Shown: one piece after another, positions 55,143-64,000 of the stretch
Layout of the letters: each line of letters begins with the position of its first letter
Position numbering within the stretch: position 1 is the stretch's first letter
Assembly (NCBI GenBank): GCA_051294905.1
Contig: CM119374.1
Coordinates: forward strand, 17,422,001-17,486,000
Length of the DNA: 64,000 nt
Direction of reading: 5' to 3'
Source of the DNA: Botryllus schlosseri
Lineage: Eukaryota
The notes under the pieces: generated by a model
What the model was told of the DNA's origin: nothing
What the model saw: the letters and a program-made list of their open reading frames with translations, nothing else
The model's database searches: none
Position numbers and translations under genes: made by a program

Positions 55143-56905
55143 TTCGAATATTGGGTTCCGGGAGTAGGAGCGTGCCACCTTATTTTTTTCTCCGTATTTC
55201 CTTTTCCCTGAGCACTTAATTCTCATTTCTTATTTGTTTGTTCGATTCTTTTGTTTGTCTGCATTGTGAACTTCGATCATGCGAATTCCGCTCTTTCTAT
55301 GCTATTGTGACAAGTGCTATCGTGTTGAATTTGCCTGAAGATAGATCTAATCTGCGCAAGGCTGGTGTGCGTTTCTGCGATCGGTTATTGGATCGCTGTA
55401 TCATCCGGTTGGTATTGGTAATGGCGTAAGCTTTGATTTCTAATAATAATATCATTTGTGTGTGCGATTGGGATTGGGACACCGATTAAGAAAACCAATT
55501 TTGTATGCGTTCTAGCAGTCTAATGCAGTGGTGCCTACGCGCCAGTGGCTCATGTGTGAAAATGTGAAGATAAACGTTACTGGTGTGTGGTATGGTCGGC
55601 AGCTCTGATAAAATTGATTCCTAACGCACATGGGCATTACGGCTTGTGCGCAAGACTACCCCGCCGTGTCACTGTCGTTCTCAGCTGCATTTTCCCGACG
55701 CATATTGCTCACGTTTCTGTAGCTAGCAGTCTAAGCCACCCTTTCTTCTTTCTTTGCAATAACGATTATTTTATTCATATTTTCTTGTGTTATAATGGCG
55801 ATGCGAGAATTTCTTAATAAACTGCTTTCTTACGGGTTGTGCGTTCTTGACGTAACGGTTGAGAAGTGTTGCTATTTTGTGGAAGTGGGCTAATACCGCA
55901 CAAGAACAGAACATGCAAGCATTCAATAGGGCTTGGATTAGGGATATGTGTCGATTTGGCGGTACGAGCGGGAATGCCACAAATCCCATTTCGATCATTC
56001 CTGGGTAACCTTATTCGAGTCGTACCGACTGAGCCATCATGAAGGTAGGAGCGTGCACGAATATGTTTTCGGGACTTCGTCTTGACATTTTGGATCTTCC
56101 ATCCCATTAATTGCAACTTCCAAAGAAGGACCTTGCCATAGTTTTATGACATTGTTAGATAACAACCCCGTATATAAGCGGTGTTTTACAAAAACCTGGA
56201 AGGGGGCCGGCAGATACGGAATCACAAAGCATATCAGCCTGGTCACTAGTGTAAATGAACATTGTAGTCGAAAAATACCATGGATAACACTAACACCAAC
56301 AGCCCCCATTGTCGTTCGCTCATCGACGCTTTTTACACAAGACCCTTCTATCGTGCCTCTCCATGTGATGGTAAAAATTGTATCTTCCGTTGACAATCGT
56401 GATTACGCAACTAGGCTACTCGTTAGTCTCCGTTCGTTTCGATCGCAAAACAAGCGTTGGGTATGCGAACAATGATAATTCCGAGGTTCGAGTTCACGGA
56501 CGAGATGGATGGGTTTATACCCTGTGAAGATTTTTGTAAGATAGCAGTTTTTTCCAGCAGTCCTAATGTTATAATCTGTAATCAGAATTCCTTGGATTTC
56601 CTCTAAGAATAATCCTAACATCTTCGAGCGGATGTTTGATTCACGAGTACAGGCTAATACTGCTGGATTTCGTGGAGGAAGTCCTGGGAAAATAGGTCTC
56701 CTCACTGCGCCAATTAAGATTAGCCGATGTTACGGGATGTAGTTTTCCAGTTGGAGAATGTAGGCTACTTACATAAATGCTCTGTTCTGTATCTGCCTGT
56801 GAATTCGTTCACACGTGGAAGATTATCCGATCCTGACAGCATTCGTATTTATGCGTATCTATTGGACCCGATAAGTCGGTTAGATGTTAGAAAACCCCGT
56901 TTTAT

Positions 56906-57411
56906 CAGGGTTGTAACCAAATCACAAGGCTCCGAGTCACAAGTCAATCTCACATTTATAGTTTTGACTCGAGTCATTTTCAATTCACCAGTGAGTCAAG
57001 TCCGAGTCCAAGTCAGCGAGCAAAGGGTCGAGTCCGAGTCATGGTGTTATGACTCGAGTCCGAGTCCAAGTCATTGTGTTGACTGATCAATTTCCAGTTA
57101 AAGTCTTGTTAAATTCACTTTTTATAACTCTGTTTGGTGATATCGAATGGTTCGTATTTATATTATACTACATTTCCTCACTTGTAGCAGTTCCTGGTCT
57201 CATTTTCCAGTACCAATAGACGAAACCCCATGTGGCTACTATTACTATTCCTCGAAATTACAATGAAATGTCGGTCTTGGCCGTCAGAGCCTCGAGTCAT
57301 ATGACTTGGTTCGAGTCAGGCGCAATGACTCGAGTCGAGTCATTTCCGTAGTTTGAGGAAATGACTCTAGTCATCAGAAAATCGTGACTCAAGTCGAGTC
57401 ATCTCAACCCG
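56906..57411. mobile_element. GACTCGAGTC-rich MITE (hAT-like), copy 2
   Basis: Ends CAGGGTTG / CAACCCG; colinear with 955-1375. Confidence 0.75.
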
Positions 57412-57808
57412 CCTGCTTGTTATGGACTGGCTACGCACCAGCGTACGACATAACCACGCCAAAGCCTGCAGTAGGCCTACTTCCTATTTGATTTGTTAAA
57501 GGAGTCTTCAAATAGATCTTCCGTACTGATTATTTTATTTCCTGTTTCTCTTTGCATTTTACCTGTTCCTTGTACTTTCTCGGTCACCCATATAAGCACA
57601 TATCAAGTGAAAGTTATTGTTACCATTTGATTGATAACGGATTCTAGAAAAACGAGAACAACACGATTAAATAAAACAGCTTTCCGCGTCTCATAGCTGA
57701 TAACAAGTTGGCCACCGCTGCATTTTCTCAGAGCTTCTTTTACCCATCACCGCCTGATCCCATGCAAACTGCTGTGCGCGAACACGATTGTCCGTAACGT
57801 TACTCCGA

Positions 57809-60800
57809 TCATAACTCGTCATCGACTCCTCGTATATGGCGAAAACTTGTGTTCCTCTTTGCTGGTGATCTCCTCTTTGGAGATTCATTTTCCTTGATGT
57901 AATCGACGATTTCGGGATACAGCAACGACGGCGCCTCCTTACCCCACAAAAAATCCAAATGGTCCCAACCCCTGATCTGCAAAAGTAATTTGCGGAGAGG
58001 ATAACCAGAGGGTCGAATGACGCTTTCGTCGAATGTCGCTTCCCTAAATTTCCCAACAAGACATAAGAATATAGTGACTTCACATAGATATACGCTGTGT
58101 CGCAACCAAACAAAGACCCCACAACGATTATTACGAAAATTGACGTGCGATATTCTGGCAACTTGAAGATATCACTTTTGTTGATATGAGTGAGCCTGGC
58201 CGCCTAGCGTCATCATAATTTTATATTCCCAAATATTTGCCGTTCACCGATTCGATAATGTTAAAATACCGCATGGTGTTAAGAACCACGACAGCGCAGA
58301 CGAAAATGAACCGCCTTCCCTCCATACGTCATAAATTCCTACTACGACACGAACCATTCTGAAGTGCACCATGCTCCTGAGGTTCGCCGCCAAATTCCTG
58401 CCATCGCGCGGGTCGGCGAGATCGTCCCTGGAGCCGAGAAACAAAACCAAAGGCGCCGTGATTCTGGCGACATCGTAGTCCGGAGGTTCCGTAGTGCCGT
58501 AGTTCTTCATATTTTCAGTTTCTGTATAAGGTGGTCAGATGTGGTCAAAAGCTCATAGTTGGTACTCGAGTGGCAGTATATGCGTAACGTGGTATATTTC
58601 TACTAAATTACAAGTAGAAATAGTGATTTATAATCTGCCAAAACTGCTTCAAGTGGAGGTAAAACATGAAAGTCTGAAGACCATCTTACTGAGGTAAGTA
58701 ATTCCAAAAGTATATTTGGTCGAGAAGTAGTATTCTTTTAGTAATCGATCAAGATGCATCTTACCGAATATCGTAGAATGACAAAATTACTAGGGCAAGT
58801 TTTTGCAACTTTTTTTTTACAGCTTCCGGCAGCTTCCTAAATACTCGTAAGATATGTAGAATGCTGTTTTAAGCTGTTTGAAGGAATCTTATAGTGCAAC
58901 TTTTGTCCATTTTTTTCATGCAACTCTTTGCAGCATTTTGCAACTTTTTCGATTATGAAAGTATTTTCGGTTTTGGTGAAATACACGGCCAAATTAGACT
59001 GAAACACCGTAAATCAGCACCGAAGTACGGGTATTTCGGGAGCTAAGCCGGTAAATTGACCTTTTTTTAGTCAACCGAGCACAATGTGGTCTTTTAGTGC
59101 AACTTTTGTCAAAAATTAATAAATAAATGCAACTTTCCGCGGATTTAACTGCAACAAAAACTTGCCCTACTAATTACTAGGGCAAGTTTTGGCAACTTTT
59201 TGAAGCTTCCGATAGCTTCATAAATGCTCAGAAGTTATGTAGTATGGTGTTTTAAGCTGTTAGGAGGATTCTTATTTTGCAACTTTTCTCCATTTTTTCA
59301 CGCAATTTTTTGTAATTTTTTCGATTTTGCATGAAACCAACTTTTTCTGGAAATATTTGGCACTATATGTAAATAGATCACTTGATTATTTGAGGTCCTT
59401 TCTGATTTGACGTTCATTCACGCTAGACCGCCGAAAATTATATATATTTTCACTGGGTCGATTTTTCAGGCTATTGATCTTGTTGAAGTCACCAGCGCTG
59501 AGTTTTGCTACTGTGCCATGGATACGGATCGATTCGACTATCTCATACCCTGATAATTTCAAGGAACTTGTCCATAAATGCAACTTTTTAGTGCAACTTT
59601 GTGAAAAATAAATGCAATTTTCCACGGATTTGACAGCAAAAAAAACTGGCCCTACTGATTACACTAGGAATATGTGTATTTCCGAAAGAAATATACAGGT
59701 GCAGTCATACAGGGGCTATTTCGCCGAGTCCTCATGACGATGCCACACATAAACGTGATGAAAACATCCCAAAGATAATTTCTACTTCGCAAAATCTAAT
59801 AGGTAATTTTGCCTTGTTTGGGAAGAAGTAGAAGTGCTCAAAAAACGTACGTACTTCAGTAAACAGTGCAAGTAGTAGAAAGCTACATGAGTACTATGTA
59901 AACGTAAAGGAACATCGTTACTGACCACCTCCGCGAGCGGCTCGATTTATGCAGAAGCGAGGCGCTAGTATCGCCTTAAAGACTTGAAATTGTGAAGCAG
60001 AAGAGGAAGTAATCTGAGATAATAACCACTCGGGTAAGAAATCCAAGCGAAGGCAATGCAAAACCTACTTGAGCAGTTCAAAAATGTAGAAGTAGGCTAC
60101 TTCAATCAATCAATCAGGTTTATTAATATTTTCACCGTTTCAAAACATCACAAGACTGCGATACAATGAAAGAATAGGAAGGTGTCGAAACAACTAGGAG
60201 TAGCCAATAAGATCAGACACCCACCTTAGTTACCTAGTCACCTTAGTCACTGACCATTTCTGCCAATGACACTCCAAAAAGGTATAGGATCTCCCAAAAT
60301 ATATATTCAGTTTCCATGATGCAGGGGCTATTTCACGCGGTTTAGATGACAATTTCATTCACAAAACTACTTTCTACCTTTCAAAATCTTGATCGTAAAA
60401 ACTGGTGTTCTAGAAGAATAGGGTTTCCATGTTTTTATATTGGAATCCAGAGAGGAGGACAATTTTTTAAATCTAAAAGCTAGATTACCGGAATTGAAAA
60501 CAGCTGATCTTAAAAAGTTTTACTGAAAATCATGTTGTGTAGACTAAAAAATACCATCACTCCGACTCGACTCCCGAAGACCGAATGACCCGCACGAACG
60601 TCCGCATTACATATTTCGCGTCGTTTATGGCATTGTTTAATGTTTGTTTAATGTTTTAAACAAAGGCCTTTAAATTTCTTTTCAAGTTGTAAAATTATGC
60701 CATAATTGTGTAAATACTTTCCAAAAAACATGCTGTATGAGCCCACGGACAATTACCACTCGATTTAGCTGACGTATATCGATATGGGATGGTTGGAACC

Positions 60801-63800
60801 CTCAAAATAGTCGGTTCAACAGTTATAGTACAGATATTTCGTCATAGGAGCTATATTTACTATATATTTTCAATATGAATATATTATGACGTCACAAATG
60901 AATATTCGTGACGTTATGGCTTAAAACAACACAATAAAAAACATGTTTTAAATTAGGGCCTCGTTTTAAACAAGTTTGTTTTAATCCATCTAAATGAGGA
61001 TATATGGTAAATAGAAGGAAAAAGGACTCGTCAGTGAATATAAATAGTCGAGTATGAAGTACAAGCACGTAAAACCTACTTGATGGCTTTAGAAATCGCT
61101 ACCAATCACATCCGCGAGCTTTTAGATTTATACAGATGCGAGACACGCCGTAGACTCGTAAAGCAAACCTGAACCGTAGTCCCATTTCTGCGTCTTTCCC
61201 GAGGTCACCAGTTGCGACATATGGATCAAATTGTGCAAAGACGTGCCGGATGGCGTCTTGGCTAGGAATACTGGAAGCCGATCATTATGATAATGATCGA
61301 CATTAAACCCGGCCAGAAACAACAGCAGGTTTTGCCCGTGGTACGACAGCGGGCTATCTTTTGCCATTCTGAAAAGAAAATACAGTTATTCTGCCCTGGT
61401 CGTTGTGCACACCACTCAATAATGACGAACAACAGTTGAGCTTGTTACACTTAAGGCACTGCGATATAAATGTGATGCGGCCCCAAATTAAAGTTGTGGT
61501 GTGAAAACATTGACAGTAGCCATCTCCTCAAGAAATCCATCGTATTGCAACTGCCAATAAAATATTTTCACTAGTGGTCCTATTGCATTAGCTATCTCTG
61601 TGGTATCGAGATCATTCGCCATCACGCGTCAATGCTTTGTACTCCTTTGCGAAATTTCTGGAAAACGTTTCTCCATTGTTGCACTTTCTCGACACGAGCC
61701 CTGTCTTGTTCCATTTCGTTACTTTACGGGGAATCTACGTAATATGTCACTTACTTTGCTTCCTCTGGAAGATGCAACAGCACAGACTCTGATTGCAACT
61801 TGGAGCACATATATATATATTGTCTATGTATAAGGTTGGTCTGTACGCTATATGCCACACTGTGAATCCATGGGTGGAAAATAGGTGTATTTATCAGATT
61901 CCCACCATGGAGGGGGTGTAAATCAGGTAAACGGCTCTTTCAGTAGACTGTGCTTTTACGCGTATTCCAACCGGTATAAATGAGTCAAATACAAAGATTA
62001 CTACGGAGATATATCACAGGGTGTAGCGGGTTCTGTTTTCATGTACCACCCCATGAAGTCCATAAAGGTGGTATACGCAAACATAACTCAGTATACACCC
62101 CTGGGATATATTTCAAAAAGTAAGGATTGTTGTGTTCAACTCATTTTCACCCATTGAAAGGGTGTAAAATACAATTTGGTACTTGGGAGTGACATTAACC
62201 TCTTTGCACCCCACGTTATGGTGCAAAGCTGATATATACACCTATCTTACCACGCAGGGATTTACAGTGTGACATATAGCGTACAGACCAACCTCATACA
62301 TAGACAATACATATATATGTGCTCCAAGTTGCAATCAGAGTTGACCACTGACCAGGTTGGGCGTATGTTTACTAGGCGTTATACATCGAAAGTATGTTAC
62401 TTGTGCATTTTAGCTGACAACCACTGGCTAATCTTCGAGCTGGGCAAGATTTCCGCTCCTCCAAATAAAGAAACTCCGAATTGGGCCACTTCCGTCAGAC
62501 CAGACAGCAGCTTGATAGGGCTTCGGATATGACCCAGAGTAGCCACGGGCGCCAGCGCTATCATCAAGTGTATCTTTTCGTTGAAGCTTGGATCTTCCGC
62601 GAGTCTGGCGAAGGCGATGAGGGTACCCTGAGAATTTGTTCATCTTCAATTATTGCTGAGCGAATCATAGAGACCATACAGAGATATCAGGACCAGAGGT
62701 GCAAGTGAGGTAGAAGCAACGCCTTAAATTTTTGGTATTTTACGGTTAGTGCTTTCCGAGACAAGGATGGGCAAACTTCGGCCCGCAACACCGTTTCGCG
62801 CGACCCGCGAAAGCTTCTAGACACGTCGTAAAATATTAATAAAATGCGTATTAAGAATCTAAATTACCGTGGGTACTTGATTCAACTTTCTTTTAATATA
62901 TTTCAACGTGATAATGATAAGTTATATTCCTACCATAGTATTTTCTATGTCATTGATAGTGCGATAACCCGACCTCGAGGCCCCTGCAGTTTGAAAGGTT
63001 TCAATTGCTAAACATCGCAGAAAGTGAAACATAAATGACCTAATCGGACCATGAGTGTAATTTTAAATAGGCAACACAAGCAAGTATATTACTTTTAGTA
63101 GATGGAAAAACCCATTCGCGAGTGTGTTATAGATGGATTCATTCTTTATGTGTGTAGAAGTAATATTTAGATATTGTAGAAGCGTAATTAAAGGGTTATG
63201 ATGCTGTCATCAGCATTGTGTGTCCTGAAGTTTAACCAAAAGTACAATCAGCAAATCGCTGCAGATCGCTGCTCACAGACTCAAATTTACACCCAATTCC
63301 AAGAAACGGGACAACCGACTTTCATCGCTAATTTTGACGATAAGGCTTATAAATTCTCGTCAATGTTTCTGACGCGAGTACGGTATCATTAAATCAATGT
63401 CTGTTTTGTTTTACCTATACAAATGAATGTATAATATTTCCATGTTGTCGGTCACTATATAATCAAATAACAATATTGAATTTTGGCTTAGTATCCTAAT
63501 TTCCTATAGTGCGGCCCGCGAATGGATTAAAATGTTGAATGCGGCTCGCGAGGTAAACGGTTTGTCCGCCCCTGAAGTAGGCGAAACCTACTTGAGTACT
63601 TCGAAAGAGTAGAAGTGCTTCGTTACTGACACTACAAATTGGCTGGATCTTCGTAAATATATCCAGTTACAGTAATACAAGGGATATTTCACGCGAGTCT
63701 CATGACAATTTAACTCACAAAACTACCTTCCACTTTTTAATATCCAAATCGTATTGGTTTGGCGAAAAAATGTGATGCAGTAGTGGATGCTGGTATAAAT

Positions 63801-64000
63801 CACAACCACTTGGGTAAGTAATGAACGCAGTCCAAACCTAGTAGAGTACTCGGAAATAGAGAATACCGGAACCACTGCACTGACTGCGGTCGGTGATAAC
63901 TCGTCTTACCTGAGAATGCCCGACGTAATACAACTTCTCCTGCCCGGTGGCCCTCAACACCGCGTCCACCATAGCCGGCAGGTCGAACTCCGACATGTGC
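57809..64000 (-). CDS. LIPA: Acid lipase of the lysosomal acid lipase / gastric lipase family (5' part beyond the window), C-terminal DDEL
   Basis: Exons >64000-63910, 62401-62627, 61169-61368, 58355-58521 and 57809-57976 are phase-consistent. Motifs [19 protein letters not shown]|GT (nucleophile Ser), [29 protein letters not shown] (Asp) and WDHLDFLWG (His). Family is certain; LIPA versus paralogue orthology is not. Confidence 0.92.
58791..59654. mobile_element. Two tandem hAT MITEs of the TAGGGCAAG family (58791-59169 and 59178-59654)
   Basis: Each has a TAGGGCAAG...(T/G)GCCCTA TIR. The 8-bp flanks are AAAATTAC / CTAATTAC / CTGATTAC, with the middle one shared. Confidence 0.88.
59710..59933. 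mobile_element. MITE, CAGGGGCTATTTC...ACTGACCACCTCCG family
   Basis: Same ends and internal GTAGAAGT motifs as 39337-39545. Confidence 0.6.
61786..62341. mobile_element. Long-TIR (~120 bp) element in a lipase intron
   Basis: ACTCTGATTGCAACTTGGAGCACATATATAT...CACACTGTGAATCC is mirrored by GGATTTACAGTGTG...ATATATATGTGCTCCAAGTTGCAATCAGAGT. No clear TSD. Confidence 0.75.
62762..63574. mobile_element. Old hAT (Charlie-like) MITE
   Basis: Degenerate ends CAAGGATGGGCAAAC / GTTTGTCCGCCCCTG with GGCCCGC subterminal motifs. Confidence 0.55.

What the first reader, a model, noticed from the sequence alone, without database searches (positions are those of the whole stretch)
57809..57976. Acid lipase with a C-terminal extension ending in DDEL: a possible ER-retained member of a lysosomal/secreted family
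Seen: after the HLDFLWG catalytic-His motif and the usual end of the fold, the last exon adds ~25 residues ([27 protein letters not shown]); the Ser/Asp/His triad is intact. Known: LIPA/LIPF-family enzymes are lysosomal or secreted and end shortly after this motif, and DDEL is a functional KDEL-type retrieval signal (e.g. Kluyveromyces lactis BiP). Inference: this paralogue may have been relocated to the ER lumen (lipid or sterol-ester turnover), or the basic KRR/KR linker may let a protease remove the signal as a switch.
Basis: partly seen in the sequence, partly recalled or inferred. Interest (0 to 1): 0.7.

Follow-up and report, generated by a model that had tools for sequence, protein, structure and literature searches.

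The report
Tunicate acid lipase with ER-retrieval tail
This is the real, transcribed last exon of a sea-squirt acid lipase gene whose relatives across tunicates all end in a KDEL-like "return to the ER" tag, so a normally lysosomal or secreted enzyme type was probably moved into the early secretory pathway, although this species' DDEL version is likely a weak tag.

Summary
Window 57976-57809 (minus strand) is the last coding exon of a 10-exon, 598-aa acid lipase gene of the LIPA/LIPF family. Spliced transcript contigs from two independent studies join it to the upstream exon at exactly 57976. They then run unspliced through the DDEL stop into at least 238 nt of 3'UTR.

- **Protein:** it has an N-terminal signal peptide, no other hydrophobic segment, an intact Ser344/Asp520/His549 triad, and a 25-residue extension past the point where solved family members end.
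- **Comparative test:** this passes. All 10 full-length clade members end in DDEL, NDEL, VDEL, KDEL or KTEL on otherwise divergent tails; five carry names (our gene, Styela, Clavelina, Phallusia, Ciona). None of about 325 non-tunicate relatives ends in xDEL.
- **Paralogues:** a sister tunicate clade ends in H-x-[D/E]-[L/F]. A third paralogue in this genome keeps the short canonical end.
- **Caveat:** this genome's KDEL receptor has the human-type gatekeepers D50/N54/E117, and its BiP, calreticulin and a GRP94-like HSP90 gene end in KDEL, KDEL and HDEL. By published human data, DDEL should therefore be a weak signal.
- **Protease-switch idea:** there is no comparative support for it.

No paper describing a natural KDEL-tailed acid lipase turned up in my searches. 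I rate it a new variant of a known kind, of moderate interest.

The parts
57809..57976 (-). Last coding exon (exon 10). It holds the catalytic His motif WDHLDFLWG, the end of the fold, the 25-aa extension and the stop codon.
   Evidence: Translation. Spliced joint 57976|58355 in contigs of runs X2 and X4.
57812..57886 (-). C-terminal extension of 25 residues (ESPKRR...GVDDEL), basic (pI about 10.8), with an NTS sequon.
   Evidence: The equivalent segment of orthologue P0163 is disordered in the AF2 model, with pLDDT below 50 for most of 585-603. Solved family members end before it.
57812..57823 (-). Codons of the terminal tetrapeptide D-D-E-L, a KDEL-type retrieval motif with Asp at position -4.
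   Evidence: xDEL or KTEL is present in all 10 full-length clade members.
57809..57811 (-). Stop codon TGA.
57959..57961 (-). Codon of the catalytic His549.
   Evidence: Invariant column in alignment A1.
57571..57808 (-). 3'UTR, minimum extent seen in a transcript contig.
   Evidence: X2 contig of 609 nt lies on 57571-57976 and 58355-58521 with no mismatch.
57534..57539 (-). Candidate polyadenylation signal AATAAA (inferred, not shown).
   Evidence: Read directly from the sequence. No read ends were available.
57977..58354 (-). Intron 9 (378 nt, GT..AG).
   Evidence: Joint in X2 and X4; depth is 0 in bin 58000-58199.
58355..58521 (-). Exon 9, with the catalytic Asp520 (codon 58426-58424).
   Evidence: Joints 57976|58355 and 58521|61169.
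61169..61368 (-). Exon 8.
   Evidence: Joints 58521|61169 and 61368|62401.
62401..62627 (-). Exon 7.
   Evidence: Joint 61368|62401. The acceptor at 62627 is read from the sequence.
63910..64000 (-). 3' part of exon 6, which runs on to 64256 beyond the window. It holds the nucleophile elbow GHSQ|G, with the Ser344 codon at 63915-63913. Exons 1-5 lie beyond the window end at extrapolated coordinates 68669-68540, 67889-67744, 67083-66906, 65780-65689 and 65618-65477 (loci L004, L005).
   Evidence: All introns are GT..AG. An X4 contig carries 1057 nt upstream of exon 7, against 1035 nt of modelled CDS in exons 1-6.

Best explanation
The stretch is the last exon of a gene for a soluble acid lipase of the secretory pathway (LIPA/LIPF fold). 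The gene belongs to a tunicate-specific clade.

The protein enters the ER through a cleavable signal peptide (MAAPFKVISLIVVICVSTSFG|SWW). It carries an acidic N-terminal extension of about 165 residues with no known domain, then a complete lipase domain with an intact triad, and ends in a flexible 25-residue tail with the tetrapeptide DDEL.

The most likely mechanism is this. When the enzyme escapes to the Golgi, the free C-terminal x-D-E-L is bound by the KDEL receptor and returned to the ER in COPI vesicles. The lipase then works in the ER lumen or early secretory pathway on lumenal neutral lipids or sterol esters, rather than in lysosomes or outside the cell.

- Shown: the gene structure, transcription of the tail, the signal peptide by hydropathy, the intact triad, conservation of the terminal motif across tunicate orders, and a canonical receptor in the genome.
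- Inferred: receptor binding, ER residence and substrate.

Asp at -4 is disfavoured by receptors with D50/E117, which this genome has. Retrieval in this species is therefore probably weak, giving partial retention or slowed export.
For: Transcribed as read: spliced contigs from two studies.

Full 598-aa model with GT..AG introns throughout, colinear with the cDNA-derived orthologue P0163 at 81% identity.

Family membership:
- PF04083 hits over the cut-off on this locus and on P0163.
- 1HLG at 8e-87 and 6V7N at 5e-86.
- Invariant Ser, Asp and His.

The only hydrophobic segment is residues 1-21.

Tails of clade members:
- P0163: DDEL.
- Styela clava P0265: DDEL, with the last 11 residues identical to ours.
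- Clavelina: NDEL.
- Phallusia: NDEL.
- Ciona intestinalis: VDEL.
- Three unnamed sequences: KDEL.
- One planktonic sequence: KTEL.

The tree places these in one clade (99/97) within an all-tunicate clade (100/100). With the 60% fill cut-off the extension, present in at most 17 of 36 rows, should have been dropped from the tree columns (inferred, not checked). None of about 325 non-tunicate relatives ends in xDEL.

The tail is disordered in the AF2 model. The KDEL receptor is present. An engineered human LIPA-KDEL is ER-localised, so this fold's C-terminus is accessible to the receptor (PMC9325671). N at -4 and KTEL are efficient signals in human cells (PMC2140024).
Against: There are no localisation data.

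DDEL does not match PROSITE [KRHQSA]-[DENQ]-E-L. In human cells DDEL binds about 8 times more weakly than KDEL and DDEL reporters are mostly secreted (PMC8248988).

The main receptor here keeps D50, N54, E117 and W120. The genome's BiP, calreticulin and GRP94-like HSP90 gene use KDEL, KDEL and HDEL, so nothing suggests a DDEL-adapted system.

The family is named for an acid pH optimum, which would fit the neutral ER poorly. Activity at neutral pH is unknown.

Two clade members lack the motif: a probably truncated Ciona savignyi prediction and the long-branch P0018.
Confidence: 0.65

Rival explanations
1. Leaky or vestigial signal. The ancestor of the clade had a strong KDEL-type tag. In the styelid lineage the change to DDEL largely disabled retrieval, so this species' enzyme is mainly secreted or sent on to lysosomes. 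In that case the conserved last 11 residues ([11 protein letters not shown]) serve another purpose, such as slowing ER exit, binding a partner or stabilising the protein.
For: Human-type receptors reject DDEL (PMC8248988), and the gatekeepers D50/N54/E117 are intact here. Abundant ER residents of this genome use KDEL or HDEL. Conservation in Styela, P0163 and our gene extends over 11 residues, more than a receptor motif needs. Three furin-type sites (RGRR, RTRR, RAKR) sit in a disordered loop of the styelid proteins, and they would only matter if the protein reaches the trans-Golgi.
Against: D-E-L is still strictly kept in three species that are 64-81% identical overall, while the neighbouring linker has diverged. 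Earlier work cited in PMC8248988 found DDEL retrieval when the receptor is abundant. The acidic EDEL of ERp18 works in human cells (PMC2140024).
Confidence: 0.22
2. Protease switch. The basic linker (KRR, AKR) is cut by a proprotein convertase or similar protease, which removes DDEL and releases the lipase from the ER cycle. KDEL-tailed plant cysteine endopeptidases are said to work this way (from memory, not checked here).
For: The tail holds PKRR and AKR upstream of DDEL. Phallusia has GRKR directly before ANDEL.
Against: The basic sites are not conserved. Ciona (…NEGVTHNVDEL) and the three KDEL-bearing members have no dibasic site, and Styela has only KK. None of the sites in our tail fits R-X-[K/R]-R. 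The convertases act in the trans-Golgi, beyond the compartment where retrieval takes place.
Confidence: 0.05
3. Chance or annotation artefact. The DDEL ending would have no function, or the true mRNA would end elsewhere.
For: Four-residue motifs do arise by chance. The two raw RNA-seq runs sampled showed no reads on the exons.
Against: Spliced contigs in two studies carry exactly this end. The orthologue's cDNA-derived protein has the same junction and end. The motif is present in 10 of 10 full-length clade members and in 0 of about 325 other relatives.
Confidence: 0.03

Closest known systems
Human gastric lipase LIPF (PDB 1HLG) and lysosomal acid lipase LIPA/LAL (PDB 6V7N)
   Same: Same fold and family, with PF04083 plus an alpha/beta-hydrolase domain. 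The GHSQG nucleophile, catalytic Asp and His are the same. The orthologue P0163 matches them at E 8e-87 and 5e-86 over the whole catalytic domain.
   Different: Those enzymes end a few residues after the last helix and are secreted or sent to lysosomes. This one adds an acidic N-terminal extension of about 165 aa, a polybasic loop before the PVVFLQHG strand, and a 25-aa tail ending in DDEL.
Mammalian ER-lumen carboxylesterases (CES1 HIEL, Ces1d HVEL)
   Same: They are soluble lipid-ester hydrolases with a signal peptide, kept in the ER lumen by a C-terminal KDEL variant. Family members without the motif are secreted (PMC5818367). This is what the tunicate enzyme most likely works like.
   Different: They belong to a different alpha/beta-hydrolase family (type-B carboxylesterases, Ser-Glu-His triad), so this would be convergence, not kinship. 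Their HXEL motifs are proven necessary and sufficient, whereas ours is untested.
Kluyveromyces lactis BiP (DDEL) and its Erd2 receptor
   Same: The same terminal tetrapeptide DDEL is used there as a genuine ER retrieval signal (PMC8248988).
   Different: DDEL recognition there goes with receptor changes at positions 50, 54 and 117 (D50N, K/R54, E117Q/N). This genome's receptor has D50, N54 and E117, as in humans.
Engineered human LIPA-KDEL
   Same: An acid lipase with KDEL added to its C-terminus is ER-localised and stays Endo H-sensitive in human cells (PMC9325671). This is an artificial version of what the tunicate clade carries naturally.
   Different: It is an artificial construct with the strong KDEL placed directly on the native end, with no linker and no N-terminal extension.

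Membership tests
Acid lipase family (LIPA/LIPF type; Pfam PF04083 + alpha/beta hydrolase) | N-terminal 'Abhydro_lipase' region (PF04083) scoring over the curated cut-off | tested here: met
   Own-genome search hits the two exons of this gene at 38.4 and 34.2 bits, with a cut-off of 27. The 81%-identical orthologue P0163 scores 64.4 bits and also matches PF00561.
Acid lipase family (LIPA/LIPF type; Pfam PF04083 + alpha/beta hydrolase) | Ser-Asp-His triad, with Ser in a GHSQG elbow | tested here: met
   Ser344, Asp520 and His549 are present in the spliced model. They are invariant in the 32-sequence alignment A1.
Acid lipase family (LIPA/LIPF type; Pfam PF04083 + alpha/beta hydrolase) | Full-length similarity to solved members | tested here: met
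   P0163 against 1HLG gives 8e-87, against 6V7N 5.3e-86 and against 1K8Q 4.8e-85. The AF2 core has pLDDT above 90.
Acid lipase family (LIPA/LIPF type; Pfam PF04083 + alpha/beta hydrolase) | Lipase or cholesteryl esterase activity with an acid pH optimum | not testable with these tools
   This needs the expressed enzyme.
Soluble ER residents retrieved by the KDEL receptor | Cleavable signal peptide and no other membrane segment | tested here: met
   The only hydrophobic stretch is residues 1-21, and small residues at -3/-1 (S, G) precede SWW. It is conserved in the orthologues. This is a hydropathy reading only; no dedicated predictor was available.
Soluble ER residents retrieved by the KDEL receptor | C-terminal tetrapeptide fitting PROSITE [KRHQSA]-[DENQ]-E-L | tested here: not met
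   DDEL has Asp at -4, which is outside the set. Clade members P0168, P0170 and P0020 (KDEL) do fit.
Soluble ER residents retrieved by the KDEL receptor | Tetrapeptide among the experimentally working variants | tested here: inconclusive
   DDEL is weak and mostly secreted in human cells (PMC8248988). EDEL, NDEL and KTEL do work (PMC2140024). No data exist for tunicates.
Soluble ER residents retrieved by the KDEL receptor | Motif conserved at the extreme C-terminus of orthologues | tested here: met
   10 of 10 full-length clade members end in x-[D/T]-E-L, on tails that otherwise differ in length and sequence.
Soluble ER residents retrieved by the KDEL receptor | Cognate receptor able to accept Asp at -4 (K. 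lactis-type changes at positions 50, 54 and 117) | tested here: not met
   The receptor on C15 has D50, N54, E117 and W120. The divergent second one on C10 has D50, D54 and E117.
Soluble ER residents retrieved by the KDEL receptor | ER localisation that depends on the motif | not testable with these tools
   This needs tagged expression with and without DDEL.

The most novel reading that the evidence does not exclude
Before the two clades split, tunicates turned an acid lipase into a resident enzyme of the ER lumen. They did this by adding a retrieval tail (x-DEL in one clade, H-x-[D/E]-[L/F] in the sister clade) and a new acidic N-terminal domain. This would be an independent parallel to the mammalian HXEL carboxylesterases that mobilise lumenal lipid. 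In addition, the styelid DDEL version would be efficiently retrieved by a receptor that keeps D50/E117. That would mean upstream tail residues (FRHIRGV) or other receptor features can override the published gatekeeper rule for position -4.
Probability: 0.15. Interest if true: 0.65.

Novelty: new variant of a known kind. Interest (0 to 1): 0.45.

Why it matters
Acid lipases are textbook lysosomal or secreted enzymes. Known lipid hydrolases of the ER lumen in animals come from other families, such as the carboxylesterases with HXEL.

A natural, anciently conserved KDEL-tailed acid lipase clade would show a second, independent route to an ER-lumen lipase. It would also give a handle on neutral-lipid or sterol-ester turnover in the tunicate secretory pathway.

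The clade is also a natural series of -4 variants (K, N, V, D) on one protein, in animals whose receptor looks human-like. That makes it a convenient test of the gatekeeper model of KDEL-receptor selectivity.

If the tag turns out not to work in this species, the finding reduces to a lineage-specific tail on an ordinary lipase.

Tried and rejected
- **Complex prediction.** A prediction of the genome's KDEL receptor with the last 55 residues gave no answer (score 0.01, controls not run). It counts neither for nor against binding.
- **Raw RNA-seq.** Runs X23 and X24, sampled at about 6%, gave no reads on the exons. No strand, expression level or poly(A) site could be read. The only RNA evidence is assembled contigs of X2 and X4.
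- **Single exons against Pfam.** These gave only sub-threshold hits.
- **First gene model.** My first model joined exon 1 directly to the PQMIRY exon (445 aa) and was wrong. Alignment to P0163 showed three missed exons and a longer exon 5. The corrected model is 598 aa.
- **N-terminal extension.** It has no Pfam family and only low-confidence helices in AF2. Its role stays unknown.
- **Naming the unnamed orthologues** (P0163, P0168, P0170, P0020, P0173, P0018). The cluster look-up gave no names or accessions.
- **Protease-switch idea.** Rejected as the main reading because the basic sites are not conserved.
- **Tails of other ER residents.** The first loci for calreticulin and HSP90 did not contain the last exons. 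They were found after fetching more DNA.
- **Earlier findings of the scan.** Only this same finding and an unrelated intronic ORF were on record.
- **Literature.** Searches for acid lipase with KDEL, and for ascidian acid lipases, found no description of a natural KDEL-tailed member. The library is incomplete, so this is not proof of novelty.
Full report
**What is there.** The finding lies on the minus strand. Translating 57976-57812 gives [30 protein letters not shown] followed by [25 protein letters not shown], with a TGA stop at 57811-57809. A pyrimidine tract and an AG sit directly upstream of 57976.

**Transcript evidence.** I laid two assembled runs (X2, a 2015 study; X4, a 2021 study) and two raw RNA-seq runs on window 56800-62799.
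- Both assembled runs contain contigs that skip 57977-58354, 58522-61168 and (X2) 61369-62400, each with GT..AG ends on the minus strand. Three consecutive intron removals show that these contigs derive from mRNA.
- The genome holds only one copy of this exon, so a processed copy is not the source.
- One X2 contig runs from exon 9 across the joint and then unspliced from 57976 down to 57571 without a mismatch. The HLDFLWG motif, the tail, the DDEL stop and at least 238 nt of 3'UTR are therefore on one RNA.
- An AATAAA lies at 57539-57534 (its role is inferred).
- The raw runs, sampled at about 6%, had no reads on the exons, so nothing can be said about expression level, strand or ends.

**The whole gene.** The window ends inside the gene. 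I located the window at C4:17422001-17486000 of a 495-Mb assembly and fetched 13 kb more.
- My first model joined a signal-peptide exon directly to the lipase domain.
- The 81%-identical orthologue P0163 is 603 aa, sits on a 1994-nt contig and is therefore cDNA-derived. Aligning it showed three further exons and a longer exon 5.
- The final model has 10 coding exons, all GT..AG, and encodes 598 aa.
- As an independent check of length, an X4 contig carries 1057 nt upstream of exon 7, against 1035 nt of modelled coding sequence in exons 1-6.
- The junctions of exons 1-6 were not seen directly.

**The protein.**
- Residues 1-21 (MAAPFKVISLIVVICVSTSFG) are the only hydrophobic segment and are followed by SWW, so this is a cleavable signal peptide by hydropathy and the -3/-1 rule.
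- Residues 22-185 are very acidic (pI 4.05), match no Pfam family and fold only as low-confidence helices in AF2.
- The lipase domain follows, with Ser344 in GHSQG, Asp520 and His549, all in invariant alignment columns.
- The orthologue matches human gastric lipase 1HLG at 8e-87 and lysosomal acid lipase 6V7N at 5e-86. The 1HLG chain ends two residues after the position of our ...IKEN, so the last 25 residues are extra.
- In the AF2 model of P0163 the core has pLDDT above 90, while the tail (most of 585-603 below 50) and a polybasic loop are disordered.

**Relatives.** The nearest named relatives are tunicates: Styela clava, Clavelina lepadiformis, Phallusia mammillata and Ciona. The genome is therefore a tunicate, probably a styelid ascidian (inference from identities of 81% and 64%).

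A maximum-likelihood tree of 36 sequences puts all 17 tunicate-type sequences in one clade (100/100), which splits into two. With the 60% fill cut-off the extension, present in at most 17 of 36 rows, should have been dropped from the tree columns (inferred, not checked).

Clade A (99/97) contains our gene. Its full-length members end as follows:
- DDEL: ours, P0163 and Styela
- NDEL: Clavelina and Phallusia
- VDEL: Ciona intestinalis
- KDEL: three unnamed sequences
- KTEL: one sequence found in marine plankton data

The two exceptions are a clearly truncated Ciona savignyi prediction and a long-branch sequence. Between the last helix and the motif the tails differ in both length (12-27 residues) and sequence. 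Only the terminal D/T-E-L is kept. Among about 325 non-tunicate relatives collected, none ends in xDEL. This pattern indicates selection on the extreme C-terminus.

**Paralogues in this genome.**
- Clade B includes a paralogue on C2 that ends in HNEF. Its relatives end in HSEF, HVDL or HSDL, and they carry an N-terminal hydrophobic anchor.
- A third, more distant gene on C11 has GHSEG and ends ...LQILES, the short canonical end. One ordinary acid lipase therefore remains beside two tailed ones.

The paper by Gerondopoulos et al. qualifies this (PMC8248988).
- The human receptor binds DDEL with KD 14.9 uM, against 1.94 uM for KDEL.
- DDEL reporters are mostly secreted.
- D50 and E117 act as gatekeepers. 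Only D50N/E117Q (plus N54K), as in K. lactis, switches the receptor to DDEL.

I therefore looked at this genome's own retrieval system.
- An intronless 212-aa receptor on C15 has D50, N54, E117 and W120. A divergent second receptor on C10 has D50, D54 and E117.
- The genome's BiP ends in KDEL, calreticulin in KDEL and a GRP94-like HSP90 gene in HDEL.

The system looks canonical, so DDEL is predicted to be a weak ligand.

Against dismissing it:
- Raykhel et al. (PMC2140024) found N at -4 as good as K, R or H. They found KTEL functional, F as good as L at -1, and the acidic EDEL of ERp18 functional.
- Older work cited saw DDEL retrieval when the receptor is abundant.
- In Styela, P0163 and our gene the last 11 residues (FRH[I/V]RGVDDEL) are nearly identical, although the linker before them has diverged.

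My reading is that the ER-retrieval tail is an old and functional feature of the clade, and that in the styelid lineage it is probably a low-affinity version giving partial retention. I put about 0.65 on at least partial receptor-dependent ER residence. I put about 0.22 on a largely disabled signal with the conserved end serving another role.

**The protease-switch idea.** Our tail has PKRR and AKR, and Phallusia has GRKR before ANDEL. Ciona and the three KDEL-bearing sequences have no dibasic site, and Styela has only KK. No R-X-[K/R]-R site lies in our tail. I give this about 0.05.

A related observation is that the styelid proteins carry three furin-type sites (RGRR, RTRR, RAKR; residues 237-248) in a disordered loop just before the PVVFLQHG strand. 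From memory, not checked here, human lysosomal acid lipase is reported to lose a propeptide at about this place.

**Comparison with what is known.** By fold and residues the protein is a member of the acid lipase family. [quoted passage not shown] An engineered human LIPA-KDEL is ER-localised (PMC9325671), which shows that the C-terminus of this fold can be read by the receptor. I found no paper describing a natural KDEL-tailed acid lipase, nor any on ascidian acid lipases. Public annotations call these proteins 'lysosomal acid lipase' or 'gastric triacylglycerol lipase-like'.

**Verdict.** It is a new variant of a known kind, of moderate interest. The decisive experiments are localisation with and without the tail and peptide binding to the tunicate receptor. 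A complex prediction of receptor plus tail gave no answer and is not used as evidence.

Noticed in passing
G000:C2:8157081-8161879 (loci L007, L035), minus strand: A second tailed acid lipase paralogue of this genome ends in ...HNLHNEF and starts with a hydrophobic anchor (KKESIIFTAGLICGFFV). Its relatives in other tunicates end in HSEF, HVDL or HSDL, so H-x-[D/E]-[L/F] is conserved. By the human variant screen (F equals L at -1, any residue at -3) this could also be a retrieval signal.
   Followed up: partly
G000:C11:27860488-27863224 (loci L033, L034), minus strand: A third, more distant acid lipase gene has a GHSEG elbow and the short canonical end ...LYRDVLQILES*. It is the candidate ordinary lysosomal or secreted member of this genome.
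   Followed up: partly
Beyond the window: extrapolated window coordinates 64235-64200 (in L004), residues 237-248 of the protein: A polybasic loop (RGRRTRRGRAKR) with three furin-type R-X-[K/R]-R sites is inserted just before the PVVFLQHG strand. It is present only in the styelid members (ours, P0163, Styela) and is disordered in AF2.
   Followed up: partly
Beyond the window: extrapolated window coordinates 68606-65625 (L004/L005), residues 22-185: An acidic N-terminal extension (pI about 4) with conserved W-[ND]-W-[ED]-x-F and P-P-E-C-x-M motifs is shared by the tunicate clade. It has no Pfam match and a low-confidence helical model. Its function is unknown.
   Followed up: partly
window 63000-63584 (intron 6): A dispersed repeat has at least 40 copies at 74-82% identity on many chromosomes.
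   Followed up: no
window 56800-57400, 58800-59200, 60000-60200, 60600-61000: Stretches downstream of the gene and inside introns 8-9 have very high summed contig depth in the transcript-like runs (up to about 30000) and many rearranged joints. They look like high-copy, transcribed repeats.
   Followed up: no
G000:C15:8312396-8312821 (L015), G000:C10:26039225-26039659 (L016), G000:C5:14175894-14178760 (L017, L018): The main KDEL receptor gene is an uninterrupted 212-aa ORF. A divergent second receptor has an altered and longer loop at positions 50-58 (…RYLDLVVDGAGVSS…), the region known to set signal specificity. Two fragments on C5 carry stop codons and look like pseudogene pieces.
   Followed up: partly
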